From NCBI RefSeq assembly GCF_963676685.1, contig NC_092353.1, positions 1,364,001 to 1,428,000 on the forward strand: 64,000 nucleotides of DNA, given 5' to 3'. Under the pieces are notes generated by a model. That model ran no database searches, was not told where the DNA came from, and saw only the letters and a program-made list of their open reading frames with translations. The translations under genes and the position numbers were made by a program. Source of the DNA: Mytilus edulis (lineage: Eukaryota). Positions 1-19,567 of the stretch are shown here, piece by piece. Every line of letters starts with the position of its first letter. The stretch's first letter is position 1.

Positions 1-137
1 TGAGTTTTCTAGTTTTTATATTAATTTTAAACTTGTAATAAATACCACTTAATTGTTATTTCTTTCTGTTTCTATACATGCAACATAAGTTTAGCGGAGG
101 AAAATACATTTTAAAGTTCATAATTCTTCTTTTGCAG

Positions 138-672
138 GTCCAAGATGCATAGTTGAATTCTATGAAAAATATACTTGAAGGCAATTGGATCTGGCGTATT
201 TTGTCGCAAGCCACTTATTTCTGATGTCCAAGATAAGAATCGCTACGGAAAGTCCGCGTTAGGAGTGAACAAGTTGAATGGTTTAATGCGTGAAATGTGC
301 GAAAAGGGGGGCTTGGTTGGCAACTTTACCAACCACTCGGGAAAAAGAACATGTGCTACTGCGCTATATCAAGCAGGAATAGATGAGCAAAAGATTATGG
401 AAAGGACTGGGCACCGCTCTACGATAGGCGTTCGAACATACAAGACCACTAACAGAAACATTCAAAAGCGAGTATCGGATGTCTTGAACCCCCCGTCCAA
501 TTGTGATATGAATGACAGTTTACAGGAATCCGTTCAAACCAAAACTGCTGTGGCCGAACCGTTTGGAAGGAATTTGAACAAGAAACACTGCCTGGGTGAT
601 ATCACAAATACATGCCGTTTGAATGATTCTGGTGCCGTTACATTCTCAAATTGTAACTTTAATTTTCATTGA
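138..672 (+). pseudogene. Crypton-like (DUF3504-type) tyrosine recombinase, last exon, frameshifted
   Basis: Acceptor ttcttttgcag ends at 137. The exon reads (G)PRCIVEFYEKY, then shifts frame at ~170-175 into LKAIG...NFTNHSGKRTCATALYQAG...IMERTGHRS...VRTYK. This gives the YR box II H-x-x-[K/R], GH and catalytic Tyr, plus the C-terminal FSNCNFNF tail typical of Crypton-type proteins. Antisense within a DCAF6 intron. Confidence 0.8.
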
Positions 673-1246
673 ATTAATATGTTGCCGAGTTATTAACTGA
701 CTAACTTTGAATTTGTTTCATTTAATGTAAAGCATAACGGTGGGCTTTTATATATTTTCACTTGAATGTATTACCGTACTAGTAATTAAAATTTCATTTT
801 AAAAGTATTCAGTTTTTGCTATTTTCAGAGATATTCCCTATGATGTTCTACACAAGAGTTTAATTTTAGTGCGAATCTAAAAAAACACACTATTCTCTTC
901 TTTCAGGTAAAAGAAGTTTGTTTATGTAAAAAAGAGGTGGAGCCTTACTGTGCACTTTCAGTGAAGTTAATGCACTGCTTTTTGGCTCCTCCCACCAATG
1001 GTTTTCTAATGGGAGATTGTTGAATAATCCTACAACAGTGCAATAACGTTCAAATCGGGAAGTTAATGCACTCCTTTCCAAAACATCAGATTTTAAAGCA
1101 CACAAAAGATCAAAGAAATTAGTAAAAATCATATTACAATATCATTTCATGCACTGAGTCTGTTTCTGTTAATTTGTGTCTAGAGTGTCATATAAAATCT
1201 TTGTAATTGGTATTCCTAGATGAGTGCCTTTTTGAGTGATTTATAT

Positions 1247-2340
1247 TAGGGATGTCAAAAGATCTGAAATTTAATACTCGGATACTCGGTCAAGATACTC
1301 GAGTACTCGCGAGTACTCGGATGAATCTTAAACGTCTATTGAAAAGTTGAGATTTAAGGTGGGATGCAGTGTTTTGTTACATATAAAACTAACGTACTAT
1401 AAACATTGCTCCTCTGTTTTTGTGTCAATTAAGCAATGAATTACCGACTGCCGTTTTCTACAAATAACCTATCATAATAGCAATTATTGTTTGTGTACGT
1501 GTTCATGAACCAAATTACAATAAAAAAAAAAAAAAATATTTGCATATAAAGTCCGACAAAGTAGCCAATATATGTATCATCTATTCATGAGGAGTTGGTA
1601 TGAAAGGACTTGTCCATTAATTTAACAACAATAATATTGGACTTCAAATTACTTTTTTGTGTTGCTCAGTCTTCCCTTTTTGCACCATCGTTTGTCTGAT
1701 TATCTTTTTTTTAAAGCCATGACGTTGTCAGTTTATTTTCGACTTTTTTTTTTTTTTTAAATTAAACAATTATAGTTAAGTTTAAAATACAGAGTGATTA
1801 AATTAATTTAAATGTACATCTCATACCAATCACGTTTACATAGAAGTCTTGATTAACAAACAAAGGTGAGTTTTATGGCTTGTGACGAGTTAATTATTAA
1901 TCCATGAAAGTGTTGATCCGTATACAAACACCGTTAAAAATGTCCCTAATCTGTTGCGTAGGGTTCACCGCCGGTCACTTTGATTTTGTTCTTATTTAGA
2001 AATATGATCTGGTCAACAATTTCAGACGAAAGACTGTTTGACTTTCTATTTTTTGTTACAAGTTGTGCACATGAAAACATTCCCTCAGAAGGAAAGGACA
2101 TTGCTGCCGGTACTACTATAACAAATAGTATCCTCATGATAAACATATTTATAATCTTAATTGATTTTATTTAATATTACGAAGGGGATATTTCAACGGA
2201 TTTAAAGTGAGTGGAAATGTGAAGAGAAAATATCTCAAAATGTATAACAGGCAAACGAGTATCCGAGTTCTAAAACTGTACTCGAGTACTCGGCCTTCCG
2301 AGCGAGTACCCGAGTACTCGAGTACTCGTTGCCATCCCTA
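1247..2340 (-). mobile_element. Internally deleted hAT DNA transposon (~1.1 kb)
   Basis: TIRs TAGGGATGTCAA / TTGCCATCCCTA. Perfect 8-bp TSD ATTTATAT (1239-1246, 2341-2348). Subterminal TACTCG(AG) repeats at both ends. Minus-strand remnant of the hAT C-terminal dimerisation domain (VPAAMSFPSEGMFS...SLSSEIVDQIIFLNKN, ~1960-2130). Confidence 0.92.
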
Positions 2341-2661
2341 ATTTATATATAATATGAGTTCATAATTATTTGTAGCACATTAATTTTCATGAATTGTAGT
2401 TCTTATAGGTGCATCACCAATTTATGTCTACAATAATATAATATTTTTCTAGGCTGTTATATAAAAGCTGCAATTAGCGAAATTAGGCATTAAACTTAAA
2501 TTGTAGGCAACAAGCTTTTTACGCATTGACATTAAAGAATCACCTTAATTTTGCCATGATTCTCAAAAAATACAAAATCATATATCCAGGAAAATACTAT
2601 TATGAATCTTATAATTTTATTTGTGAGTAACACAATTTTGAATAAGATTATTAGTGCTTAC

Positions 2662-2775
2662 ATCTTTACAATCTTCTTTAAGACAGCTAGTTTTGATTCG
2701 TAAATCAAACCATCGAACCGTCCCATCTTCTCCACAGGATAAAAACGTTTTTGCTTCATTAGGGATCACAATTAC
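2662..2775 (-). CDS. DCAF6: DCAF6 coding exon 6 ([38 protein letters not shown])
   Basis: 114 nt bounded by tttacag| and |gtaagc. The peptide matches DCAF6 [29 protein letters not shown]. The gene continues beyond the left edge. Confidence 0.93.
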
Positions 2776-3788
2776 CTGTAAATATATAGTGATTTCTGTT
2801 TATAAAGTTAAATCAAAGGACATTTCACTATAGAAACATGTGGTCTAAGACACTTTCATTAGAACTTGTTTCATGATTGTCTTAGGATAACAGCAATATG
2901 AATCAAACATAATTCAATAATGGATGGCTGGGTTATATACATGTACATTTGCCTTATACCTCATCCTTCTGAAGTTCTCTACATATTAAATTCTAGACAG
3001 CCCTAATTATGGACTTGCATTTCTATTTGAAAATATGATGGTTTTAATGACATCTAAGTATCATTCAAGTGTAAAGTTTCACAAAGGCCAAGCTTAAAAT
3101 ATAATACAGTTATCTCCAATATAATGCAGCATATTAAATTAAATGCCATTTATTAACAAAAAAATTGGTGTAAAATGACATAAATAAAAAGTCTGCAAAA
3201 CTGTTTCACTGTCTTCAACAATATGACGTCATATGTATACTAACGATGTCAAACGTAAAACTCTAGACTTATTTACACCTTTCTTTCGCTTCAGAATGGC
3301 TTCTACATTAACAAATCAAAGCGCGAAAGCGCTGTAAAGGCAGTTAATTACAGGTTGTGTGTATTTCTAGTCCAGTTATATCATTATCTTCCATAGAACA
3401 GAGGTGGTTTGTAGTATTTAAGATTTAGAGTTCTCTTGTACCTAGTTCACCTATATCTATAGTCTACTGTTTACAGTATATTTTCTGTACCTCGCCATGA
3501 AATGCATTTTCAAGACATAAGAACTTTTCCTTTTTAATGTAAATAAAACTATTTTTAATTATTGATTATAGACACATATTCAATTACTCCTATCCTATGA
3601 AAAATTATTCACAAAGATTGACTAGTCTCCGTTCTGTGTGTATTGCTAGAACATCAAGTAACATAATGGTTAATGTACATAGTAACATGTCAACTCTTTT
3701 AAAGACAAAACTTTTTTAAAATTTTCCCTCCAAGCAAAATTATTTTTCAGTATAAACATGATAAAGTTATCTACCTGTATTAATGACC

Positions 3789-4549
3789 TAGAGACTCTCA
3801 AGAGCCTGTGTCGCTCACCTTGGACGGTCTATGTGCATATTAAACAACGGACACATATAAAATGACAAAATTGTGTTTTTGATGATGGGGATGTGTTTGT
3901 AGATCTTTCTTTACTGAACATTCTTGGTGCTACAATTATCTCTATCTATAATAAACATGGCCCAGTATTTACAGTTGAAAATATTTTTTAAAAATTAACA
4001 AAAAATACAAAAATTTATGAAAATTGTTAAAAATTGACTATAAAGGGCAATAACTCTTTAAGGGGTCAACTTAAAATTTTGGTCATATTGACTTATTTGT
4101 AGATCTTACTTTGCAGAACATTATTGCTGTTTACAGTTTATCTCTATCTATAATAATATTTAAGATAATAACCAAACTCTGCAAAATTTCCTTCAAATTA
4201 CTAATTTGGGGGCAGCAATCCATCAACGGGTTGTCAGATTTGTCTGAAAATTCCTGGGCAGATAGATCTTCACTGAAGAGACAATTTCATCCTATGTCAG
4301 ATTTGCTCTAAATGCTTTGGTTTCAGAGTTATAAGCCAAAATCTACATTTTACCTGTATGTTCTATTTTTGGCCATAGTGGCCATCTCGGTTGGTTGACC
4401 GGTTCTAACCACACATTTTTTAAATTAGATACCGCAATGATGATTTTGGCTAAGTTTGGTTAAATTTGGCACAGTAGTTTCAGAGAAGATTTTTTGTAAA
4501 AGTTTATGGACGATGAAACCAAGTGATGAGTCAGGTCAGGTGAGCTAAA
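3789..4549 (+). mobile_element. Non-autonomous Pearl/HINE-like interspersed element
   Basis: Starts CTAGAGACTCTCAAGAGCCTGTGTCGCTCACC and ends CAGGTGAGCTAA. The subterminal inverted motif GCTCACC/GGTGAGC and internally repeated modules fit bivalve Helentron-associated elements. Confidence 0.5.
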
Positions 4550-5012
4550 GAGGAGTTTTTAATCAAGGTAACAATGACATCTGGTGGCCATAAAAGCTGT
4601 CTCATTAGCATTTTAACCACTTCCCATATTTGCTTTTAAGACAATAGAAGAAAATTATTCAATGCAAAAACAAAACTTACTTGTAAATATGAAATTCTCT
4701 TTACAGTATGAGTTTTTCTCATTGTTGGAGATTGTACAGTAGTACAGTCCTGTAACTGCTTATACCCATTTCTTATCCCCTTTAGTTTGATAAACTCACA
4801 GAATATCATATATTTACATTGTGCCACATCTCCTTATTTTTATATGCATTACAATAACATGAACAATTGTAATTCAAATCTATATATCAAAGCAAAATGA
4901 ATTTCACTACTTTCATTCATGCATCCTTTGGAAAAATATAAGTTCTAAAATGACACAATATATGTTTATTTATATAAAAATAATATTTAGTTTTCGACTC
5001 TTAACAGGTATA

Positions 5013-5300
5013 AACAAAAATGTGTCCCCAGTACACGAATGCCCCACTCGCACTATCATTTTCCATGTTCAGTGGACCGTGACATTGGGGTAAAAACTCT
5101 AATTTGGCATTAAAATTAAAAAGATCATATCATAGGGAACATGTGTACCAAGTTTGAAGTCGATTGGACTTCAACTTCAGCAAAAACTACCTTGACCAAA
5201 AACTTTAACCTGAAGAGGGACAGACGGACGGACGAACAGACGAACGGACGCACAGACCAGAAAACATAATGCCCCCCTACTATCGTAGGTGGGGCATAAA
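5013..5300 (+). mobile_element. Pearl/HINE-like MITE with GACG/GACA microsatellite and 3' hairpin
   Basis: 5' AACAAAAATGTGTCC, core repeat, (GACG/GACA)n, then hairpin GCCCCCTAC..GTAGGTGGGGC. A related copy lies at ~55005-55522. Confidence 0.7.
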
Positions 5301-6097
5301 AATGCACAGCTGTGTCATGATTTGTGAAATCTGTGCTGAAAACATAGGCATTTATGGTGTTTGAGTAATTCCATCTGTGAAGCTTAACATTAGCTCGTCA
5401 GTTGGTGGTGGACAGTTATAAATCTTTCCTGCAGGATGAATGTACATCTGTTCAGGAAAACCAATTTCACAAATCAAAACTTTCCTCTAGATTTCTCCTA
5501 CAATATTCATCCAGTTTAGTTCTTTTGGTTTAACGGGACACCGTCCTGATTTTTAATTTTGTAAACCATTCAGTCTCTTGCTTACAAATGGTGCATGAAA
5601 ATAGGATGGGAAATTATGCATGGCAGTAGACAAGTCTCTATAAAGTGGGTATGTGCCCTGAAAAAAGTTTTATAACATTAGCTTTTTTGAAACTTGTGAA
5701 AGACTTGTGCAACACACATACCTAAATAACTATAATATAGGTGGAGAGCATCATTCATGTCAATGTTTTGTTCCTGTTTACATTGTCATTGATATTTTTC
5801 AAGAAAGCCCGAGGCATAGCTCATGAATTCTTGTCATTACAACCGAAATTTACATAATTATTGCTAAAATAATTATCAGTATAATATATCTCTTGTAGAA
5901 AAACCATACAATTGTAGTATTAACCAAAAAATGTCAAACAGATGATATTGAATCGGAATCCCAAAAGTTATGACGTCTTGAATTCACCCCCCTTTTTATT
6001 CTAAAACGATAATTGCGGTTGCAAACAGACTTTGGTTTACTTGCATGGCGATTATATAAATAACAGTATATATTTCTTAAAGAAAATAAAGTTTTAC

Positions 6098-6306
6098 CAT
6101 GAATAGTTTCCTGAACGTAGTCGTTTTCAGTAAAATGTGCCTTGCAAACAACAGCTGATTGATATGGGTTCTACGATTGCATCGCACATGACAATCTACG
6201 TTTGAGCCATGGCGTTGATCCAACTTTTCCATCTTATTAAGTCATTTAGAAATGCAAGTCCTCCTCTTAAATGACACTCAGGTACACACCAACAAGGACT
6301 AGGCAT
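6098..6306 (-). pseudogene. Decayed THAP zinc-finger exon (probably transposon-derived)
   Basis: ATG at 6306 reads MPSPCWCVPECHLRGGLAFLNDLIRWKSWINA. After a stop and frameshift it reads NPYQSAVVCKAHFTENDYVQETIH|gtaaaa. This is the C2CH THAP signature (CxVPxC ... W ... VCxxHF). A possible degenerate second exon starts at an acceptor near 5658. Confidence 0.7.
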
Positions 6307-6363
6307 CGTTAATTGTGTGATTGTTTTGCAGTGCAAAAACGGAAGTTAAGGACGGAACTGACT

Positions 6364-6980
6364 GGTCTCACTAATAAGAGACAAGAAGAATTTTAGAGAC
6401 AAACAGCGACAAGAAGTTTAATTTAGTGATGAAGCGACAATAACTAACAAGGGACAAGCGAATCGTAATTCTCTCACGAGGGCCCCTCAGGCTATTCTCA
6501 TTTGATGTGATAGGGTGAAGCTACACCTATCAAATATGTCCCTATGAAAAAGAAGAATTTCACTGTTGGAAAGGAAATGATATTGCATGGTTTTGATTCA
6601 ATAAATTCTTTAAAAGGAAATTGAAATTTTTTTGTTTTGATGGCCAATTTTTAGCGTGTGCTTAAAATATATATATTTATATCTAATAAAAACTAATCCC
6701 TTTCTTCTTAATAAAAACATATTTTTATCTATCAATGTACAGTAATATAAAAAATGTTTTATAACCGCCCCTATAATAAAAAATAATGCATGTTTTTTTT
6801 AATATCTATGGGGAATAAGTTGTCGCAATGACATTTTTTTTATTTATGTATAGTCGCTATATAGTCTTCTTGACGCTTCTTCTCGCTAAATTAATTATAT
6901 TGTCGCTTCTTATCGCTATTTTAATTTTATTGTCGCTTCTTATCACTTTTTGACGCTTCTTGTCTTTAATTAGTGGAACC
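6364..6980. mobile_element. MITE with imperfect ~25-bp TIRs
   Basis: Left end GGTCTCACTAATAAGAGACAAGAAG versus reverse complement of right end GGTTCCACTAATTAAAGACAAGAAG. Mirrored subterminal AGCGACAA / TTGTCGCT repeats. Confidence 0.6.
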
Positions 6981-7680
6981 CTATTCAGGAACGATAATTT
7001 CATATTTTACATAACTGAGACCGAAATAACTATAACGTCATACGGCTTCACGTACAGAAATACTTTAAATTGTATATTATGCAATATAATTCACGGTCAG
7101 TCGACTTTTAATTATAATATCATGTTATATCAACGAGTGAAATGATTTTAAAATATCTTTAGATCGCAAATAGTACTCGAAATTGAACGGACCTCTTTCC
7201 ACACGGAATTCGAATAATGATAGTTTGTAATCAGATTGACTGCTTATAATGCAAAAGACACATTAATAAACAGATTTTTAAAACGAACAATACACACTGA
7301 TGGTTTCTTTATTTCCCAATATAAATGAAAGGAACAAAAACCAATACATACCACAAAAAGTAGAGAAGAAATTTAAACATTTCCGGATCTATTTCTTGCA
7401 AAATGACCCCCAGCAAAGATTTGCGTAAGGAAAGATGAACCTCATGACTTGAAAGTCAGGCCTAAAAGCACTGCCTTTAAAAATACATTTTAAGGCTCAA
7501 AATGTGACTTTCATGTTTATGTAGTGAGAAATTAAATACCTCAAAAAAATCGTAATGGTGGCTTTCTTAGTAACAGACTGGTAGAACATAGAATTAACCC
7601 CTTCAAAATATTTGTCCAATGGAAATTATTGTTTCAAACAAATTGCACTAGAATAAATTATAATTAAATTTACTACAAAC

Positions 7681-7785
7681 CTCATAAGTTGTTCCAAAAT
7701 GACAGTCAAATAAACTAGCCTCATGTTGATCTTCTTGACCTACTTTTGTATAGTAAATTTTTCCATCACCAGAGCAACTTATTAT
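7681..7785 (-). CDS. DCAF6: DCAF6 coding exon 5 (IISCSGDGKIYYTKVGQEDQHEASLFDCHFGTTYE)
   Basis: 105 nt, tttgtag| and |gtttgt, phase 0/0. Matches DCAF6 IVSCSGDG...FxCHxGTTYE. Confidence 0.92.
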
Positions 7786-8014
7786 CTACAAACAAAATCT
7801 CAAATAAATAAACTGTATCAACTAATAAATCATTTATATTATAATTGGTCATGAAAAATGAATGAGTTACTAATTCACATTGGACAATTCTAACACCTTC
7901 TCATTTACTTTTAAACTTATTCTCAAATAATTGATGATGATATGGGGTTAGTGTCTTTCATTTGTGAGAGTGTTTGGTTGGTTTTTTTTCTGTTTTTACA
8001 CTTGTAAAGTGTAG

Positions 8015-8332
8015 GGATTATAGAATTGCCCGTGTTAAACTCCCATCTTACCCAAAGGTTTCAATGATCTAAGAGATAATAGAACTGCCTGTGTTAATCT
8101 CCCATCTTACCAAAGGTTTTAATGATCTAAGAGATAATAGAATTGCCCGTGTTAAATTCCCATCTTACCCAAAGGTTTCAATGATCTAAGAGATAATAGA
8201 ACTGCCTGTGTTAATCATCCCTCTTACCAAATGTTGCCTAAGATATAATAGAACTGCCCATCTTACCTAAGGTTGTCATGATCTAAGAGATAATAAAATT
8301 GCCCATGTTAAACTCCTATTCTTACCCAAGGT
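8015..8332. repeat. Degenerate ~59-bp tandem repeat (~5 units)
   Basis: Repeated ATAATAGAAYTGCCYGTGTTAA..CCCATCTTACC(C)AAAGGTTTYAATGATCTAAGAG. Confidence 0.8.
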
Positions 8333-8462
8333 TGCATGTATATGTGCTATAAGCATACTTTACTTTTTTATTTGTTCTTTTTTTCCTAATTATCCAATAA
8401 TTAACATAAGTGTTGAGAAAATGGCATTTACATTTGACAAACTTACGAATATATAAAGATAT

Positions 8463-9052
8463 CACTGACCTGACTATCTCCAGTAAAAAGAAGGTATTTA
8501 GCACTGACCTGACTATCTCCAGTAAAAAGAAGGTATTTAGCACTGACCTGACTATCTCCAGTAAAAGGAAGGTATTTAGCACTGACCTGACTATCTCCAG
8601 TAAAAAGAAGGTATTTAGCACTGACCTGACTATCTCCAGTAAAAAGAAGGTATTTAGCACTGACCTGACTATCTCCAGTAAAAGGAAGGTATTTAGCAAT
8701 GACCTGACTATCTCCAGTAAAAGGAAGGTATATAGCACTGACCTGACTATCTCCAGTAAAAAGAAGGTATTTAGCACTGACCTGACTATCTCCAGTAAAA
8801 GGAAGGTATTTAGCACTGACCTGACTATCTCCAGTAAAAGGAAGGTATATAGCACTGACCTGACTATCTCCTGTAAAAGGAAGGTATTTAGCACTGACCT
8901 GACTATCTCCAGTAAAAGGAAGGTATTTAGCACTGACCTGACTATCTCCTGTAAAAGGAAGGTATTTAGCACTGACCTGACTATCTCCAGTAAAAGGAAG
9001 GTATTTAGCACTGACCTGACTATCTCCTGTAAAAGGAAGGTATTTAGCACTG
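8463..9052 (-). repeat. 39-bp x15 tandem repeat made of the DCAF6 exon 4 3' end plus splice donor
   Basis: Minus-strand unit AGTGCTAAATACCTTCCTTTTACWGGAGATAGTCAG|GTC encodes SAKYLPFTGDSQ(V). The first unit is inside the exon. Confidence 0.95.
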
Positions 9053-9093
9053 AAAATGTTCGCTCTGTGTCCTGATCTTATGGATGTTATTTT
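9016..9093 (-). CDS. DCAF6: DCAF6 coding exon 4 (KITSIRSGHRANIFSAKYLPFTGDSQ), shortest form
   Basis: atttcag| acceptor, CAG|gtcagt donor, 78 nt. Matches DCAF6 TIRSGHRANIFSAKFLP. The 3' boundary is ambiguous in 39-nt steps down to 8470. Confidence 0.9.
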
Positions 9094-9394
9094 CTGAAAT
9101 ATAATAAAATTCATTAATACATACATGACATTATCACAAGGGTGTTCCATTAACACATACATAGTACCACGGGTTCTTTTTTTATTGAGATGAATATTCT
9201 GTATGGAAAAGACCTGCCTGCAAAAGTTTTAGTTTAAACAGTATTTATTAATGAAAAATTACAACAATAAAGTATTACAATGTAACATGAAATTCAAATA
9301 TGGGATTTTGAAACAAGTTTGGAAAAACTTATATAAATCTGTCTCCCAAAATTTTTACTCGTGCTGTCAGTGTTCTTCCAAGGGCCTTTTAGCA

Positions 9395-9608
9395 TCATGT
9401 TCATGTGATGCTATATTGGTCATGTGATGCTATATTGGTCATGTGATGCTATATTTGTCATGTGATGCTATATTGGTCATGCGATGCTATACTGGTCATG
9501 TGATGCTATATCTGTCATGTGATGCTTTATTGGTCATGTGATGCTATACTGGTCATGTGATTCTACATTTGTCATGTGATGCTATATAGGTCATGTGATG
9601 CTGTATTG
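9395..9608. repeat. 19-bp minisatellite (~11 units)
   Basis: Unit GTCATGTGATGCTATATTG. Confidence 0.9.
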
Positions 9609-10167: not shown

Positions 10168-13100
10168 TACATGTATTTGGACATTGAATTAGTGATTGAA
10201 GGACCTATTTATTACTACATGTATTTGGACATTGAATTAGTGATTGAAGGACCTATTTATTACTACATGTATTTGGACATTGAATTAGTGATTGAAGGAC
10301 CTATTTATTACTACATGTATTTGGACATTGAATTAGTGATTGAGGACCTATTTATTACTACATGTATTTGGACATTGAATTAGTGATTGAAGGACCTATT
10401 TATTACTACATGTATTTGGACATTGAATTAGTGATTGAAGGACCTATTTATTACTACATGTATTTGGACATTGAATTAGTGATTGAAGGACCTATTTATT
10501 ACTACATGTATTTGGACATTGAATTAGTGATTGAAGGACCTATTTATTACTACATGTATTTGGACATTGAATTAGTGATTGAAGGACCTATTTATTACTA
10601 CATGTATTTGGACATTGAATTAGTGATTGAAGGACCTATTTATTACTACATGTATTTGGACATTGAATTAGTGATTGAAGGACCTATTTATTACTACATG
10701 TATTTGGACATTGAATTAGTGATTGAAGGACCTATTTATTACTACATGTATTTGGACATTGAATTAGTGATTGAGGACCTATTTATTACTACATGTATTT
10801 GGACATTGAATTAGTGATTGAAGGACCTATTTATTACTACATGTATTTGGACATTGAATTAGTGATTGAAGGACCTATTTATTACTACATGTATTTGGAC
10901 ATTGAATTAGTGATTGAAGGACCTATTTATTACTACATGTATTTGGACATTGAATTAGTGATTGAAGGACCTATTTATTACTACATGTATTTGGACATTG
11001 AATTAGTGATTGAAGGACCTATTTATTACTACATGTATTTGGACATTGAATTAGTGATTGAGGACCTATTTATTACTTACATGTATTTGGACATAGAATT
11101 AGTGATTGAAGGACCTATTTATTACTACATGTATTTGGACATTGAATTAGTGATTGAAGGACCTATTTATTACTACATGTATTTGGACATTGAATTAGTG
11201 ATTGAAGGACCTATTTATTACTACATGTATTTGGACATTGAATTAGTGATTGAAGGACCTATTTATTACTACATGTATTTGGACATTGAATTAGTGATTG
11301 AGGACCTATTTATTACTACATGTATTTGGACATAGAATTAGTGATTGAAGGACCTATTTATTACTACATGTATTTGGACATTGAATTAGTGATTGAAGGA
11401 CCTATTTATTACTACATGTATTTGGACATTGAATTAGTGATTGAGGACCTATTTATTACTACATGTATTTGGACATAGAATTAGTGATTGAAGGACCTAT
11501 TTATTACTACATGTATTTGGACATAGAATTAGTGATTGAAGGACCTATTTATTACTACATGTATTTGGACATTGAATTAGTGATTGAAGGACCTATATAT
11601 TACTACATGTATTTGGACATTGAATTAGTGATTGAAGGACCTATTTATTACTACATGTATTTGGACATTGAATTAGTGATTGAAGGACCTATTTATTACT
11701 ACATGTATTTGGACATTGAATTAGTGATTGAAGGACCTATTTATTACTACATGTATTTGGACATTGAATTAGTGATTGAAGGACCTATTTATTACTACAT
11801 GTATTTGGACATTGAATTAGTGATTGAAGGACCTATTTATTACTACATGTATTTGGACATAGAATTAGTGATTGAAGGACCTATTTATTACTACATGTAT
11901 TTGGACATTGAATTAGTGATTGAGGACCTATTTATTACTACATGTATTTGGACATTGAATTAGTGATTGAAGGACCTATTTATTACTACATGTATTTGGA
12001 CATAGAATTAGTGATTGAAGGACCTATTTATTACTACATGTATTTGGACATAGAATTAGTGATTGAAAGGACCTATTTATTACTACATGTATTTGGACAT
12101 TGAATTAGTGATTGAAGGACCTATTTATTACTACATGTATTTGGACATAGAATTAGTGATTGAAGGACCTATTTATTACTACATGTATTTGGACATAGAA
12201 TTAGTGATTGAAGGACCTATTTATTACTACATGTATTTGGACATTGAATTAGTGATTGAAGGACCTATTTATTACTACATGTATTTGGACATTGAATTAG
12301 TGATTGAAGGACCTATTTATTACTACATGTATTTGGACATTGAATTAGTGATTGAAGGACCTATTTATTACTACATGTATTTGGACATTGAATTAGTGAT
12401 TGAGGACCTATTTATTACTACATGTATTTGGACATTGAATTAGTGATTGAGGACCTATTTATTACTACATGTATTTGGACATTGAATTAGTGATTGAAGG
12501 ACCTATTTATTACTACATGTATTTGGACATTGAATTAGTGATTGAGGACCTATTTATTACTACATGTATTTGGACATTGAATTAGTGATTGAAGGACCTA
12601 TTTATTACTACATGTATTTGGACATTGAATTAGTGATTGAAGGACCTATATATTACTACATGTATTTGGACATTGAATTAGTGATTGAAGGACCTATATA
12701 TTACTACATGTATTTGGACATTGAATTAGTGATTGAAGGACCTATTTATTACTACATGTATTTGGACATAGAATTAGTGATTGAAGGACCTATTTATTAC
12801 TACATGTATTTGGACATTGAATTAGTGATTGAAGGACCTATTTATTACTACATGTATTTGGACATTGAATTAGTGATTGAAGGACCTATTTATTACTACA
12901 TGTATTTGGACATTGAATTAGTGATTGAAGGACCTATTTATTACTACATGTATTTGGACATTGAATTAGTGATTGAAGGACCTATTTATTACTACATGTA
13001 TTTGGACATTGAATTAGTGATTGAAGGACCTATTTATTACTACATGTATTTGGACATTGAATTAGTGATTGAAGGACCTATTTATTACTACATGTATTTG

Positions 13101-14477
13101 GACATTGAATTAGTGATTGAAGGACCTATTTATTACTACATGTATTTGGACATTGAATTAGTGATTGAAGGACCTATTTATTACTACATGTATTTGGACA
13201 TTGAATTAGTGATTGAAGGACCTATTTATTACTACATGTATTTGGACATTGAATTAGTGATTGAAGGACCTATTTATTACTACATGTATTTGGACATTGA
13301 ATTAGTGATTGAAGGACCTATTTATTACTACATGTATTTGGACATTGAATTAGTGATTGAAGGACCTATTTATTACTACATGTATTTGGACATTGAATTA
13401 GTGATTGAAGGACCTATTTATTACTACATGTATTTGGACATTGAATTAGTGATTGAAGGACCTATTTATTACTACATGTATTTGGACATTGAATTAGTGA
13501 TTGAAGGACCTATTTATTACTACATGTATTTGGACATTGAATTAGTGATTGAAGGACCTATTTATTACTACATGTATTTGGACATTGAATTAGTGATTGA
13601 AGGACCTATTTATTACTACATGTATTTGGACATTGAATTAGTGATTGAAGGACCTATTTATTACTACATGTATTTGGACATAGAATTAGTGATTGAAGGA
13701 CCTATTTATTACTACATGTATTTGGACATTGAATTAGTGATTGAAGGACCTATTTATTACTACATGTATTTGGACATTGAATTAGTGATTGAAGGACCTA
13801 TTTATTACTACATGTATTTGGACATTGAATTAGTGATTGAAGGACCTATTTATTACTACATGTATTTGGACATTGAATTAGTGATTGAAGGACCTATTTA
13901 TTACTACATGTATTTGGACATTGAATTAGTGATTGAAGGACCTATTTATTACTACATGTATTTGGACATAGAATTAGTGATTGAAGGACCTATTTATTAC
14001 TACATGTATTTGGACATAGAATTAGTGATTGAAGGACCTATTTATTACTACATGTATTTGGACATAGAATTAGTGATTGAAGGACCTATTTATTACTACA
14101 TGTATTTGGACATTGAATTAGTGATTGAAGGACCCTATTTATTACTACATGTATTTGGACATTGAATTAGTGATTGAAGGACCTATTTATTACTACATGT
14201 ATTTGGGACATTGAATTAGTGATTGAAGGACCTATTTATTACTACATGTATTTTGGACATTGAATTAGTGATTGAAGGACCTATTTATTACTACATGTAT
14301 TTGGACATTGAATTAGTGATTGAAGGACCTATTTATTACTACATGTATTTGGACAATTGAATTGAAGGACCTATTTATTACTACATGTATTTGGACATTG
14401 AATTAGTGATTGAAGGACCTATTTATTACTACATGTATTTGGACATTAAATTAGTGATTGAGGACCTATTTATTACT
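10168..14477. repeat. 48-bp satellite, copy A (~90 units), in DCAF6 intron 3
   Basis: Unit TACATGTATTTGGACATTGAATTAGTGATTGAAGGACCTATTTATTAC, nearly invariant. Confidence 0.98.
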
Positions 14478-14605
14478 ATTGGGAAATAATTATCCTTTTG
14501 TTCTTATTAGCTGTAGCAATCAGCTTTAATGAAATAAAGAGAAAATGACAAATAATTTTCAGTAGAATCTGCACCTTTTTTTACTTCTATTATCTGATTA
14601 TTTAC

Positions 14606-14698
14606 CTTCCTCTTGAATGGATCTGTTATAACCAAGTGCTGATCATCTGATCCTGATAAAATATTCTGACCTGAAGAACTCCAACATAAAGTGTTTAC
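14606..14698 (-). CDS. DCAF6: DCAF6 coding exon 3, copy A ([31 protein letters not shown])
   Basis: 93 nt, tttttcag| and |gtaaat. Identical to 19205-19297. One of the two copies is probably an assembly artefact. Confidence 0.6.
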
Positions 14699-14919
14699 CT
14701 GAAAAATAAGGCATTTTCCATAATAAATTTATTAAAGTACAGATTCTTTTTTTTTTTAATTATCTCCCTTGGAATATGTATGTATACTCTCTTTATTATT
14801 ATATTAATTATAATAAATTAAAGACAAATTCTTATGATGTCATGATCAGATTTTGAGACTGGTTCTAAAACTCGTTGTACAACTGTATAAGTAGTTAAGA
14901 ACCCATGCACATCATTTGT

Positions 14920-15019
14920 NNNNNNNNNNNNNNNNNNNNNNNNNNNNNNNNNNNNNNNNNNNNNNNNNNNNNNNNNNNNNNNNNNNNNNNNNNNNNNNNN
15001 NNNNNNNNNNNNNNNNNNN
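14920..15019. other. Assembly gap (100 N)
   Basis: Run of N. Confidence 1.
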
Positions 15020-18000
15020 CATTGAATTAGTGATTGAAGGACCTATTTATTACTACATGTATTTGGACATTGAATTAGTGATTGAAGGACCTATTTATTA
15101 CTACATGTATTTGGACATTGAATTAGTGATTGAAGGACCTATTTATTACTACATGTATTTGGACATTGAATTAGTGATTGAAGGACCTATTTATTACTAC
15201 ATGTATTTGGACATTGAATTAGTGATTGAAGGACCTATTTATTACTACATGTATTTGGACATTGAATTAGTGATTGAAGGACCTATTTATTACTACATGT
15301 ATTTGGACATTGAATTAGTGATTGAAGGACCTATTTATTACTACATGTATTTGGACATTGAATTAGTGATTGAGGACCTATTTATTACTACATGTATTTG
15401 GACATTGAATTAGTGATTGAAGGACCTATTTATTACTACATGTATTTGGACATTGAATTAGTGATTGAAGGACCTATTTATTACTACATGTATTTGGACA
15501 TTGAATTAGTGATTGAAGGACCTATTTATTACTACATGTATTTGGACATTGAATTAGTGATTGAAGGACCTATTTATTACTACATGTATTTGGACATTGA
15601 ATTAGTGATTGAAGGACCTATTTATTACTACATGTATTTGGACATTGAATTAGTGATTGAGGACCTATTTATTACTACATGTATTTGGACATAGAATTAG
15701 TGATTGAAGGACCTATTTATTACTACATGTATTTGGACATTGAATTAGTGATTGAAGGACCTATTTATTACTACATGTATTTGGACATTGAATTAGTGAT
15801 TGAAGGACCTATTTATTACTACATGTATTTGGACATTGAATTAGTGATTGAAGGACCTATTTATTACTACATGTATTTGGACATTGAATTAGTGATTGAG
15901 GACCTATTTATTACTACATGTATTTGGACATAGAATTAGTGATTGAAGGACCTATTTATTACTACATGTATTTGGACATTGAATTAGTGATTGAAGGACC
16001 TATTTATTACTACATGTATTTGGACATTGAATTAGTGATTGAGGACCTATTTATTACTACATGTATTTGGACATAGAATTAGTGATTGAAGGACCTATTT
16101 ATTACTACATGTATTTGGACATAGAATTAGTGATTGAAGGACCTATTTATTACTACATGTATTTGGACATTGAATTAGTGATTGAAGGACCTATATATTA
16201 CTACATGTATTTGGACATTGAATTAGTGATTGAAGGACCTATTTATTACTACATGTATTTGGACATTGAATTAGTGATTGAAGGACCTATTTATTACTAC
16301 ATGTATTTGGACATTGAATTAGTGATTGAAGGACCTATTTATTACTACATGTATTTGGACATTGAATTAGTGATTGAAGGACCTATTTATTACTACATGT
16401 ATTTGGACATTGAATTAGTGATTGAAGGACCTATTTATTACTACATGTATTTGGACATAGAATTAGTGATTGAAGGACCTATTTATTACTACATGTATTT
16501 GGACATTGAATTAGTGATTGAGGACCTATTTATTACTACATGTATTTGGACATTGAATTAGTGATTGAAGGACCTATTTATTACTACATGTATTTGGACA
16601 TAGAATTAGTGATTGAAGGACCTATTTATTACTACATGTATTTGGACATAGAATTAGTGATTGAAGGACCTATTTATTACTACATGTATTTGGACATTGA
16701 ATTAGTGATTGAAGGACCTATTTATTACTACATGTATTTGGACATAGAATTAGTGATTGAAGGACCTATTTATTACTACATGTATTTGGACATAGAATTA
16801 GTGATTGAAGGACCTATTTATTACTACATGTATTTGGACATTGAATTAGTGATTGAAGGACCTATTTATTACTACATGTATTTGGACATTGAATTAGTGA
16901 TTGAAGGACCTATTTATTACTACATGTATTTGGACATTGAATTAGTGATTGAAGGACCTATTTATTACTACATGTATTTGGACATTGAATTAGTGATTGA
17001 GGACCTATTTATTACTACATGTATTTGGACATTGAATTAGTGATTGAGGACCTATTTATTACTACATGTATTTGGACATTGAATTAGTGATTGAAGGACC
17101 TATTTATTACTACATGTATTTGGACATTGAATTAGTGATTGAGGACCTATTTATTACTACATGTATTTGGACATTGAATTAGTGATTGAAGGACCTATTT
17201 ATTACTACATGTATTTGGACATTGAATTAGTGATTGAAGGACCTATATATTACTACATGTATTTGGACATTGAATTAGTGATTGAAGGACCTATATATTA
17301 CTACATGTATTTGGACATTGAATTAGTGATTGAAGGACCTATTTATTACTACATGTATTTGGACATAGAATTAGTGATTGAAGGACCTATTTATTACTAC
17401 ATGTATTTGGACATTGAATTAGTGATTGAAGGACCTATTTATTACTACATGTATTTGGACATTGAATTAGTGATTGAAGGACCTATTTATTACTACATGT
17501 ATTTGGACATTGAATTAGTGATTGAAGGACCTATTTATTACTACATGTATTTGGACATTGAATTAGTGATTGAAGGACCTATTTATTACTACATGTATTT
17601 GGACATTGAATTAGTGATTGAAGGACCTATTTATTACTACATGTATTTGGACATTGAATTAGTGATTGAAGGACCTATTTATTACTACATGTATTTGGAC
17701 ATTGAATTAGTGATTGAAGGACCTATTTATTACTACATGTATTTGGACATTGAATTAGTGATTGAAGGACCTATTTATTACTACATGTATTTGGACATTG
17801 AATTAGTGATTGAAGGACCTATTTATTACTACATGTATTTGGACATTGAATTAGTGATTGAAGGACCTATTTATTACTACATGTATTTGGACATTGAATT
17901 AGTGATTGAAGGACCTATTTATTACTACATGTATTTGGACATTGAATTAGTGATTGAAGGACCTATTTATTACTACATGTATTTGGACATTGAATTAGTG

Positions 18001-19077
18001 ATTGAAGGACCTATTTATTACTACATGTATTTGGACATTGAATTAGTGATTGAAGGACCTATTTATTACTACATGTATTTGGACATTGAATTAGTGATTG
18101 AAGGACCTATTTATTACTACATGTATTTGGACATTGAATTAGTGATTGAAGGACCTATTTATTACTACATGTATTTGGACATTGAATTAGTGATTGAAGG
18201 ACCTATTTATTACTACATGTATTTGGACATTGAATTAGTGATTGAAGGACCTATTTATTACTACATGTATTTGGACATAGAATTAGTGATTGAAGGACCT
18301 ATTTATTACTACATGTATTTGGACATTGAATTAGTGATTGAAGGACCTATTTATTACTACATGTATTTGGACATTGAATTAGTGATTGAAGGACCTATTT
18401 ATTACTACATGTATTTGGACATTGAATTAGTGATTGAAGGACCTATTTATTACTACATGTATTTGGACATTGAATTAGTGATTGAAGGACCTATTTATTA
18501 CTACATGTATTTGGACATTGAATTAGTGATTGAAGGACCTATTTATTACTACATGTATTTGGACATAGAATTAGTGATTGAAGGACCTATTTATTACTAC
18601 ATGTATTTGGACATAGAATTAGTGATTGAAGGACCTATTTATTACTACATGTATTTGGACATAGAATTAGTGATTGAAGGACCTATTTATTACTACATGT
18701 ATTTGGACATTGAATTAGTGATTGAAGGACCTATTTATTACTACATGTATTTGGACATTGAATTAGTGATTGAAGGACCTATTTATTACTACATGTATTT
18801 GGGCATTGAATTAGTGATTGAAGGACCTATTTATTACTACATGTATTTGGACATTGAATTAGTGATTGAAGGACCTATTTATTACTACATGTATTTGGAC
18901 ATTGAATTAGTGATTGAAGGACCTATTTATTACTACATGTATTTGGACATTGAATTAGTGATTGAAGGACCTATTTATTACTACATGTATTTGGACATTG
19001 AATTAGTGATTGAAGGACCTATTTATTACTACATGTATTTGGACATTAAATTAGTGATTGAGGACCTATTTATTACT
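15020..19077. repeat. 48-bp satellite, copy B (~84 units)
   Basis: Same unit and same order of variant units as copy A. Confidence 0.98.
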
Positions 19078-19204
19078 ATTGGGAAATAATTATCCTTTGT
19101 TCTTATTAGCTGTAGCAATCAGCTTTAATGAAATAAAGAGAAAATGACAAATAATTTTCAGTAGAATCTGCACCTTTTTTTACTTCTATTATCTGATTAT
19201 TTAC

Positions 19205-19297
19205 CTTCCTCTTGAATGGATCTGTTATAACCAAGTGCTGATCATCTGATCCTGATAAAATATTCTGACCTGAAGAACTCCAACATAAAGTGTTTAC
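19205..19297 (-). CDS. DCAF6: DCAF6 coding exon 3, copy B
   Basis: 93 nt, phase 0/0. Matches DCAF6 VNTICW...ILSGSDD. Contiguous with exons 1-2. Confidence 0.9.
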
Positions 19298-19567
19298 CTG
19301 AAAAATAAGGCATTTTCCATAATAAATTTATTAAAGTACAGATTCTTTTTTTTTTTAATTATCTCCCTTGGAATATGTATGTATACTCTCTTTATTATTA
19401 TATTAATTATAATAAATTAAAGACAAATTCTTATGATGTCATGATCAGATTTTGAGACTGGTTCTAAAACTCGTTGTACAACTGTATAAGTAGTTAAGAA
19501 CCCATGCACATCATTTGTCCAAAGGATAGATAACTCTTGATATGGTATAAAACAACTTAATACTTAC

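What the first reader, a model, noticed from the sequence alone, without database searches (positions are those of the whole stretch)
8463..9093. Ladder of 15 in-frame splice donors: tandem amplification of the DCAF6 exon 4/intron boundary
Seen: the 39-bp unit is the last 12 codons of exon 4 plus GTC, so each unit regenerates CAG|GTCAGT (one reads GTCATT). All units are stop-free and in phase with exon 5. TCAGTG microhomology (TTTTCAGTGCT in the exon, GGTCAGTGAT in the intron) explains the origin. The exon-proximal units keep the Pro of FSAKxLP, while Pro-to-Leu variants sit in distal units, which hints that the first donor dominates. Inference: donor choice or repeat-number polymorphism could insert 0-14 copies of VSAKYLPFTGDSQ (up to 182 aa) into a WD40 blade of a CRL4 substrate receptor. 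Reiterated CAG|GT sites, two downstream units with a pyrimidine tract plus ACAG, also fit the tandem-duplication model of intron gain or recursive splicing.
Basis: partly seen in the sequence, partly recalled or inferred. Interest (0 to 1): 0.8.

Follow-up and report, generated by a model that had tools for sequence, protein, structure and literature searches.

The report
Splice-donor minisatellite in mussel DCAF6 intron
An intron of a DCAF6-like gene begins with 14 extra tandem copies of the preceding exon's end and its splice signal, but the RNA reads examined use only the first signal, as in a repeat type already known from human factor VII and from amphioxus.

Summary
A 39-bp x 15.2 tandem array (8463-9053, gene on the minus strand) repeats the last 36 nt of a 78-nt exon plus GTC. 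It gives 15 donors: 14 CAG|GTCAGT and one CAG|GTCATT. All units are stop-free and in frame. The gene is DCAF6-like.

The proposed isoform ladder is not supported. I laid three RNA-seq runs. Twelve junction reads (10 start points) join 9016 to 7785 unambiguously. Eight more (3 start points) were placed at 8860, but carry only 23-30 nt on the array side. Those letters are identical before donors 0, 2 and 4. RNA depth is zero over the array bins 8476-8841 and 8903-8963. So only the first donor is seen in use, and the other 14 are silent pseudo-sites inside the intron. The bound is loose: 0 of 20 reads puts other donors below about 14%.

This kind is already known: the human F7 IVS7 37-bp VNTR, with IFI6, CBS, LMNB2 and PDGFA (PMC1557585), and amphioxus "mirages" (PMC3087553). 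Earlier notes of this scan report several such arrays elsewhere in this same genome, so it is recurrent here. Verdict: a new member of a known kind, of low to moderate interest. Copy-number polymorphism and rare donor use remain untested.

The parts
9016..9093 (-). Exon 4 of the DCAF6-like gene, 78 nt (KITSIRSGHRANIFSAKYLPFTGDSQ). Its last 36 nt are the exonic part of unit 0.
   Evidence: Translation. Acceptor at 9093: 8 X22 reads run on into the exon 3 sequence (loose ends). Aligns to residues 77-101 of the spliced relative P0002, 23 of 25 identical.
8463..9054 (-). 39-bp minisatellite: 15 units (9054..8470) plus a 7-nt partial copy. Unit 0 spans the exon/intron boundary.
   Evidence: TRF, unit table, 5 distinct unit types, 14 junctions against 0 expected.
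9010..9018 (-). First donor CAG|GTCAGT, cut between 9016 and 9015. It is the donor seen in use.
   Evidence: Joint 9016 to 7785 in 6 + 5 + 1 reads (5 + 4 + 1 start points), with up to 71, 59 and 72 nt on the shorter side.
8464..8979 (-). 14 reiterated 5' pseudo-sites at 39-nt steps: cuts after 8977, 8938 ... 8470. Thirteen are CAG|GTCAGT and one is CAG|GTCATT.
   Evidence: No unambiguous RNA joint, and RNA depth is zero in bins 8476-8841 and 8903-8963.
7786..9015 (-). Intron 4 as spliced, 1230 nt. It holds units 1-14, 677 nt of unrelated sequence and a 59-bp x 3.8 array at 8016-8235.
   Evidence: Joint 'skips 1230' with ends that read GT..AG on the minus strand. TRF.
7681..7785 (-). Exon 5, 105 nt (IISCSGDGKIYYTKVGQEDQHEASLFDCHFGTTYE), phase 0 with exon 4.
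   Evidence: 34 of 35 identical to P0002 residues 102-136. Loose ends at 7679 run on into the exon 6 sequence.
14606..14698 (-). Exon 3, the copy nearest the array (VNTLCW...DPFKRK). A second, 99.7% identical copy lies near 19205-19297 beyond an N gap.
   Evidence: ORF. The end ...AAGAGGAAG|GTAAAT matches the loose-end consensus of 8 X22 reads at 9095. The start is inferred from the alignment to P0002, not from reads.

Best explanation
This is a 'mirage'-type minisatellite, a tandem array whose first monomer spans an exon/intron boundary. It sits in a DCAF6-like gene of a mollusc.

Origin (inferred): replication slippage or unequal exchange between two TCAGTG microhomologies 39 nt apart, one in the exon and one just inside the intron. 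This duplicated the last 36 exon nucleotides plus GTC. The array then grew to 15 units by single- and multi-unit duplications. Alternating ACA/ACT units 0-4 suggest 78-bp steps. The pattern Ile/x/Leu in units 5-7 and 8-10 suggests 117-bp steps.

Effect on RNA (shown): the pre-mRNA carries 15 near-identical 5' splice sites, and the mRNA reads examined join only the first to exon 5. Units 1-14 are removed as part of the intron, and the protein keeps the conserved spacing.

Cause of the choice (inferred): the 36 nt before and 39 nt after most sites are the same, and no stable RNA structure is predicted. The choice therefore has to be positional: nearness to the upstream acceptor (a 78-nt exon, exon definition) or a 5'-to-3' first-site preference, as shown by mutagenesis for human F7. 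The array is most likely a neutral intronic VNTR.
For: Anatomy.

Splicing: joint 9016 to 7785 in 12 reads (10 start points) from 3 RNA runs of 2 studies. Eight reads (3 start points) were placed at 8860 with at most 30 nt on that side. The 23-37 nt before donors 0, 2 and 4 are identical, and 8860 is the ACA-type donor nearest exon 5. RNA depth is 0 in bins 8476-8841 and 8903-8963, against 5.9-7.0 in the exon 4 bin of X21 and X22.

Protein: a spliced relative (P0002) has exon 4 and exon 5 adjacent at residues 101/102. The spacing FSAK[FY][LM]P-(9 aa)-xxxDG is 9 aa in 55 and 8 aa in 2 of the 57 proteins that hold both motifs, out of 121 stored.

Structure: exon 4 plus four units folds worse than all 200 shuffles, z = +2.34.

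Background: 26% of the window is tandem arrays, so arrays arise easily here.

Precedent: F7, LMNB2 and PDGFA use only the authentic donor (PMC1557585, Introduction and Discussion). Amphioxus mirages do not disturb regular splicing (PMC3087553, passages).
Against: Depth is small: 20 junction reads, 13 start points, with only about 6, 6 and 18 in 100 of the three runs read, and tissues unknown. Zero of 20 bounds other donors only below about 14%, and zero of 12 below about 22%. The 8 short-sided reads cannot be assigned formally. In human IFI6 and CBS the second and third donors are used as well (PMC1557585, Introduction), so low-level use here would have precedent. In-frame products would escape nonsense-mediated decay. 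The copy number 15 and neutrality were not tested. The slippage origin is inferred from the microhomology alone.
Confidence: 0.85

Rival explanations
1. Alternative-donor ladder: several of the 15 donors are used, or repeat-number alleles change the choice. This would give DCAF6 isoforms with 13 to 182 extra residues between two strands of a WD40 blade.
For: All units are stop-free and in phase, so the products would escape nonsense-mediated decay. The donors are identical 9-mers. Eight reads were placed at donor 4. IFI6 and CBS use up to three reiterated donors (PMC1557585, Introduction).
Against: Those 8 reads have at most 30 nt on the array side, and that sequence is identical before donors 0, 2 and 4. 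No RNA read covers 8903-8963 or 8476-8841. All reads with more than 37 nt on that side are first-donor. The loop length at the insertion point is 9 aa in 55 of 57 relatives. In the model of P0002 the junction lies at the loop-to-strand border between strands 88-93 and 101-106, at pLDDT about 96.
Confidence: 0.08
2. Assembly artefact: the array exists, but its length or unit order in this assembly is wrong (collapsed or over-extended).
For: The same scaffold holds a 4.5-kb, 99.7% identical duplication that abuts a 100-N gap, so local assembly errors do occur. No long genomic read was examined.
Against: Contigs of an independently labelled organism B run 50 nt into the distal end of the array with 0 differences (8187-8519). 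A 69-nt ACA-type piece there has depth 30.8, against about 7-12 in the flanks, which fits about three such units, as here. The five unit variants form an ordered pattern, not a collapsed consensus.
Confidence: 0.1
3. Recursive splicing or a nascent new intron or exon: the pyrimidine-tract + ACAG sites in units 2 and 4, followed 11 nt later by a donor, act as recursive or micro-exon sites (tandem-duplication model of intron gain).
For: TTTTACAG occurs at 9034, 8956 and 8878. The mirage literature proposes such a route to new introns (PMC3087553, section 16 passages).
Against: No joint ends or starts at these sites, and 8 X22 reads join exon 3 to 9093 only. The intron existed before the array, because 677 nt below the array are unrelated to the unit. 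Recursive intermediates are short-lived and would be hard to see at this depth.
Confidence: 0.03

Closest known systems
Human F7 intron 7 VNTR, 37 bp x 5-9 (Borensztajn et al. 2006, PMC1557585; I read the abstract, Introduction, Discussion and reference passages)
   Same: The first monomer spans the exon/intron boundary. The authentic donor is followed by identical pseudo-sites, and only the most upstream site is used. No masking structure was found there, nor here.
   Different: The F7 unit is 4 nt exon + 33 nt intron and not a multiple of 3. Here it is 36 nt exon + 3 nt intron, in frame and stop-free, with 15 copies, in an invertebrate. No mutagenesis has been done here.
Amphioxus 'mirages': Adh3 and globin genes (Ebner et al. 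2010, PMC3087553, passages only; the original Adh3 paper was not seen)
   Same: Minisatellite-like tandem duplications of exon/intron boundaries in an invertebrate. Regular splicing is kept, and length instability and an intron-gain model are discussed.
   Different: Units there are 10-160 bp and may copy acceptor or donor sides. Polymorphism is shown there and not tested here. Additional files 4-7 of that paper (alignments) could not be seen.
Human IFI6 (6-16) and CBS intron 13 minisatellites (known to me only as cited in PMC1557585; Turri 1995 is not held)
   Same: Long runs of reiterated donors: 25 pseudo-sites in IFI6, 15-20 repeats in CBS.
   Different: [quoted passage not shown] Here no unambiguous use of any pseudo-site appears in 20 junction reads.
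Human LMNB2 (100 bp x 10-15) and PDGFA intron 4 (81 bp x 16-18) (as cited in PMC1557585)
   Same: The exon/intron junction is reiterated and only the authentic donor is used.
   Different: Longer units. Details not read.
Rogers-type intron gain by tandem duplication of AG|GT (as cited in PMC3087553; PMC2891723 seen only in a search listing)
   Same: A tandem duplication that carries an AG|GT.
   Different: That model makes a new intron inside a former exon. Here an existing intron is merely lengthened.

Membership tests
Exon/intron-boundary minisatellite ('mirage', F7 IVS7 type) | Head-to-tail array of minisatellite-sized units | tested here: met
   39 bp x 15.2, 97% matches, no indels
Exon/intron-boundary minisatellite ('mirage', F7 IVS7 type) | The first monomer spans a real exon/intron boundary, so the splice site is reiterated in the intron | tested here: met
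   Reads cut at 9016|9015. 15 donors: 14 CAGGTCAGT and 1 CAGGTCATT
Exon/intron-boundary minisatellite ('mirage', F7 IVS7 type) | Regular splicing at the authentic (most upstream) site is kept | tested here: met
   12 unambiguous and 8 compatible junction reads of 20. Zero RNA depth over array bins 8476-8841 and 8903-8963. Low depth.
Exon/intron-boundary minisatellite ('mirage', F7 IVS7 type) | Variable copy number among alleles (VNTR) | not tested
   The single read-laying run used short-read contigs for DNA, which cannot count units
Multi-donor minisatellite (IFI6 / CBS type) | mRNAs made from the second or third reiterated donor as well | tested here: not met
   No read needs a donor other than the first. 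The bound is only below about 14-22%.
DCAF6 (DDB1- and CUL4-associated factor 6 / NRIP) orthologue | Sequence closest to proteins named DCAF6 | tested here: met
   Exons 4, 5 and 6 are 23 of 25, 34 of 35 and 38 of 45 identical to P0002. P0002's best named relatives are DCAF6 of a bat, a sea star and a clam, at E 1e-99 to 1e-108.
DCAF6 (DDB1- and CUL4-associated factor 6 / NRIP) orthologue | Full-length architecture and DDB1 binding | not tested
   The gene runs off the window's low end. Only the N-terminal propeller part was seen.
Recursive splice site | Junction reads or a sawtooth at an intronic AG|GT site | tested here: inconclusive
   No such joints, but the depth is too low to exclude intermediates
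Intron gain by tandem duplication | A new intron bounded by the two copies of a duplicated exonic AG|GT | tested here: not met
   The spliced intron runs on 677 nt past the array into unrelated sequence

The most novel reading that the evidence does not exclude
In some tissues, stages or long alleles the second or third donor is used at a few percent, as in human IFI6 and CBS. This would give nonsense-decay-proof DCAF6 isoforms with 13 or 26 extra residues (a repeat of strand-plus-loop SAKYLPFTGDSQ) at the hairpin between two strands of the second WD40 blade. Repeat-number polymorphism would then tune a CRL4 substrate receptor. More broadly, this genome's many donor arrays would be a natural library for testing the 'first donor wins' rule outside mammals.
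Probability: 0.1. Interest if true: 0.45.

Novelty: new member of a known kind. Interest (0 to 1): 0.2.

Why it matters
Fifteen identical, in-frame donors in one pre-mRNA are a clean natural test of how a 5' splice site is chosen when sequence cannot decide. Here, in a mollusc, the most upstream site is the only one seen in use, which matches the F7 result obtained in mammalian cells. That points to a positional rule wider than mammals.

For annotation it is a warning. The 261-codon open frame across the array invites gene models with a false 182-residue insertion in a conserved WD40 blade.

For DCAF6 biology nothing unusual is shown.

Tried and rejected
1. Pfam on single exons gave only weak WD40-type hits. 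The hits on the read-through array ORF (Inos-1-P_synth, DUF7737 and others) are repeat artefacts and I disregard them.
2. PDB sequence search with the exon 6 ORF gave generic WD40 chains and DCAF8 at E 0.05. No chain named DCAF6 was among the 60 listed.
3. A word search with the 208-aa exon 4 + array read-through found no protein that carries the repeated unit. It returned P0002 (useful) and P0001, an unrelated repeat protein that shares KYLPFTGD by chance.
4. A metagenome-contig scan for the 31-nt unit junction gave 0 hits.
5. RNA structure masking of the downstream donors is rejected (z = +2.34).
6. Selection as the cause of the Pro/Leu gradient is rejected as unnecessary (and reasoning).
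7. Print searches: searches found F7 and related cases. One search (DCAF6, bivalve, mussel, tandem repeat) listed no paper with DCAF6 among its 10 rows, so I found no report of this array in that library. The library lacks most subscription journals.
8. I did not use the large representative-protein search or fold search, because the protein was not left open.

Full report
**What is there.** On the minus strand, a 78-nt exon (9093-9016) encodes KITSIRSGHRANIFSAKYLPFTGDSQ. TRF reports a 39-bp array of 15.2 copies at 8463-9053, with 97% matches and no indels. In the gene's register the 15 units run from 9054 to 8470. Unit 0 is the exon's own last 13 codons. Units 1-14 begin GTC, the first three intron bases, followed by the same 36 nt. 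None has a stop, and 39 nt is 13 codons.

Each unit ends CAG and is followed by GTCAGT. The one exception is GTCATT, at the donor after unit 8. After the last unit the unique intron continues GTCAGTGATATC. The 31-nt unit junction occurs 14 times in the window, against 0 in 100 shuffles. The array matches a single place in the 1.37-Gb genome. The exonic TTTTCAGTGCT and intronic GGTCAGTGAT share TCAGTG exactly 39 nt apart in a single-copy reconstruction, which accounts for the period and the 7-nt partial copy. This part is what the sequence shows. Origin by slippage is an inference from it.

**Unit variants.** There are five unit types:
- ACA type: units 0, 2, 4.
- Plain ACT type: units 1, 3, 6, 12.
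- Lys-to-Ile type: units 5, 8.
- Ser-to-Ile type: unit 9.
- Pro-to-Leu type: units 7, 10, 11, 13, 14.

The alternation in units 0-4 and the Ile/x/Leu pattern in units 5-7 and 8-10 look like 78- and 117-bp multi-unit duplications (inference). The Leu units do cluster distally (exact rank test p = 0.0095 over 2002 arrangements). But if only donor 1 is used, all of units 1-14 are intronic, so this is better read as identity by descent than as selection.

**The gene.** Single exons give only weak WD40 hits in Pfam and generic WD40 chains in the PDB. A word search with the read-through ORF returned P0002, a 303-aa protein from a 1114-nt Logan contig.
- Exon 4 aligns to its residues 77-101 (23 of 25 identical).
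- Exon 5 aligns to residues 102-136 (34 of 35 identical).
- The exon 6 ORF aligns to residues 136-180 (38 of 45 identical).

The pieces are therefore adjacent, with no insert. P0002's best named relatives are 'DDB1 and CUL4 associated factor 6' of a bat, a sea star (X4 isoform) and a clam (Mya arenaria, partial), at E about 1e-99 to 1e-108. The DCAF6 label therefore holds for the part seen.

Among the 121 proteins stored, 57 hold both flanking motifs. The spacing between the motifs is 9 aa in 55 of them and 8 aa in 2. An AlphaFold model of P0002 (32-row alignment A1, mean pLDDT 82.7) puts strands at 88-93 and 101-106. The exon 4/5 junction (101/102) sits at the loop-to-strand border, at pLDDT about 96. 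An insertion would therefore fall inside a blade whose loop length is strongly conserved.

**RNA evidence.** This came from the one read-laying run, on window 7500-9300. I laid three raw-read RNA runs with the species label of the best DNA holder, plus DNA contigs of 'organism B'. About 6, 6 and 18 in 100 of the RNA runs were read.
- Joint 7785-9016 (skips 1230, GT..AG on the minus strand): 6, 5 and 1 reads, with 5, 4 and 1 start points and up to 71, 59 and 72 nt on the shorter side. These reads cover the unique 5' half of exon 4, so they are unambiguous.
- Joint 7785-8860: 2, 6 and 0 reads, with 1, 2 and 0 start points and at most 23 and 30 nt on the array side.

The 23-37 nt before donors 0, 2 and 4 are identical, and 8860 is the ACA-type donor nearest exon 5. 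These reads therefore fit the first donor equally well. The depth table decides between the two readings. RNA depth is 0 in all three runs over the array bins 8476-8841 and 8903-8963. The 0.74 and 2.49 in bin 8842-8902 equal the short ends of those 8 reads. A transcript that used donor 4 would have to cover 8903-8963.

Loose ends confirm the other junctions:
- exon 3 to 9093: 8 X22 reads, whose consensus equals the end of exon 3 found;
- exon 5 to exon 6, at 7679.

All X21 and X22 reads have the first mate on the plus strand, which fits a minus-strand RNA in the usual stranded libraries. In sum, 20 of 20 junction reads are compatible with the first donor and none requires another. Zero of 20 bounds other donors below about 14%, and zero of 12 below about 22%. 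By the 13 distinct start points the bound is near 20% (my arithmetic, same formula). Because the products would be in frame, nonsense-mediated decay cannot explain their absence.

**DNA evidence.** An organism B contig covers 8187-8519 with 0 differences, reaching 50 nt and one unit junction into the array. A 69-nt ACA-type piece has depth 30.8, against about 7-12 in the flanks. The array therefore exists, with several units, in a differently labelled sample. The number 15 and any polymorphism remain unchecked.

**Mechanism.** Sequence cannot distinguish the 15 sites. Exon 4 plus four units folds worse than every one of 200 shuffles (z = +2.34), so masking by structure is unlikely. The donor matches 8 of the 9 consensus positions MAG|GTRAGT as quoted in PMC1557585, with C at +3. 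That is no weaker than the used donors of exon 3 (AAG|GTAAAT) and exon 5 (GAG|GTTTGT). The choice must therefore be positional. It could be nearness to the upstream acceptor, since a 78-nt exon suits exon definition. It could also be the 5'-to-3' first-site preference shown by mutagenesis for F7. This step is inferred, not shown here.

**Comparison with what is known.**
- PMC1557585 (abstract, Introduction and Discussion read) describes exactly this arrangement in human F7: 37 bp x 5-9, with only the first donor used. It also lists IFI6, where the authentic donor is followed by 25 pseudo-sites and the two most proximal are used as well, and CBS, where two pseudo-sites are likewise used. In LMNB2 and PDGFA only the authentic site is used.
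- PMC3087553 (passages read) names such exon/intron-boundary repeats 'mirages' in amphioxus Adh3 and globin genes. Its Additional files were not seen.
I had found the F7 paper myself before that.
- The notes report several further donor- or acceptor-anchored arrays elsewhere in this genome. The notes call it a mussel, one of them a blue mussel. One follow-up states that only the first copy is used there. I did not test those loci or the species name.
- Tandem arrays cover 26% of this window, so an array that happens to capture a splice junction is not surprising here.

**What is particular to this case.** The unit is 92% exonic, in frame and stop-free. The host is a highly conserved WD40 blade. 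RNA reads were laid directly on the array.

**Verdict.** The isoform ladder, recursive splicing and intron gain are not supported. This is a new member of a known kind, recurrent in this genome, and of low to moderate interest.

Noticed in passing
window 10421-14919 and 15020-19518, with an N gap at 14920-15019: Two blocks of 4.5 kb are 99.7% identical and abut a 100-N gap. Each holds about 4 kb of a 48-bp satellite plus exons 2-3 of the same gene. This looks like a false duplication made at scaffolding, not a real exon duplication.
   Followed up: partly
window 10168-19078: TRF merges a 48-bp satellite into one call of 185 copies. It lies in intron 3, and tandem arrays cover 26% of the whole window.
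   Followed up: partly
window 9208-9300 and 7500-7621: Very high word depth in the organism B contigs (up to 1128 and 288, against about 10). RNA reads with many different loose ends also lie at 9208-9300. These are probably dispersed, transcribed repeats inside introns 3 and 5.
   Followed up: no
window 7735: T>C in RNA reads: 7 of 10 in X22, 2 of 2 in X24, 0 of 8 in X21. By my reading it is a synonymous third-base change in a Gln codon of exon 5, so it looks like an allele and not editing.
   Followed up: no
protein P0001 (ENA, 331 aa): An unrelated metagenomic repeat protein carries GKYLPFTGD in each of its roughly 44-aa repeats. It shares 8 residues with the array unit, which I take to be chance.
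   Followed up: no
window 8016-8235 and 9401-9608: Two more minisatellites flank the exon: 59 bp x 3.8 in intron 4 and 19 bp x 10.9 in intron 3.
   Followed up: no
window 8446-9228, minus strand: A 261-codon open frame runs through exon 4 and the whole array. Gene predictors could turn it into a false long exon.
   Followed up: partly
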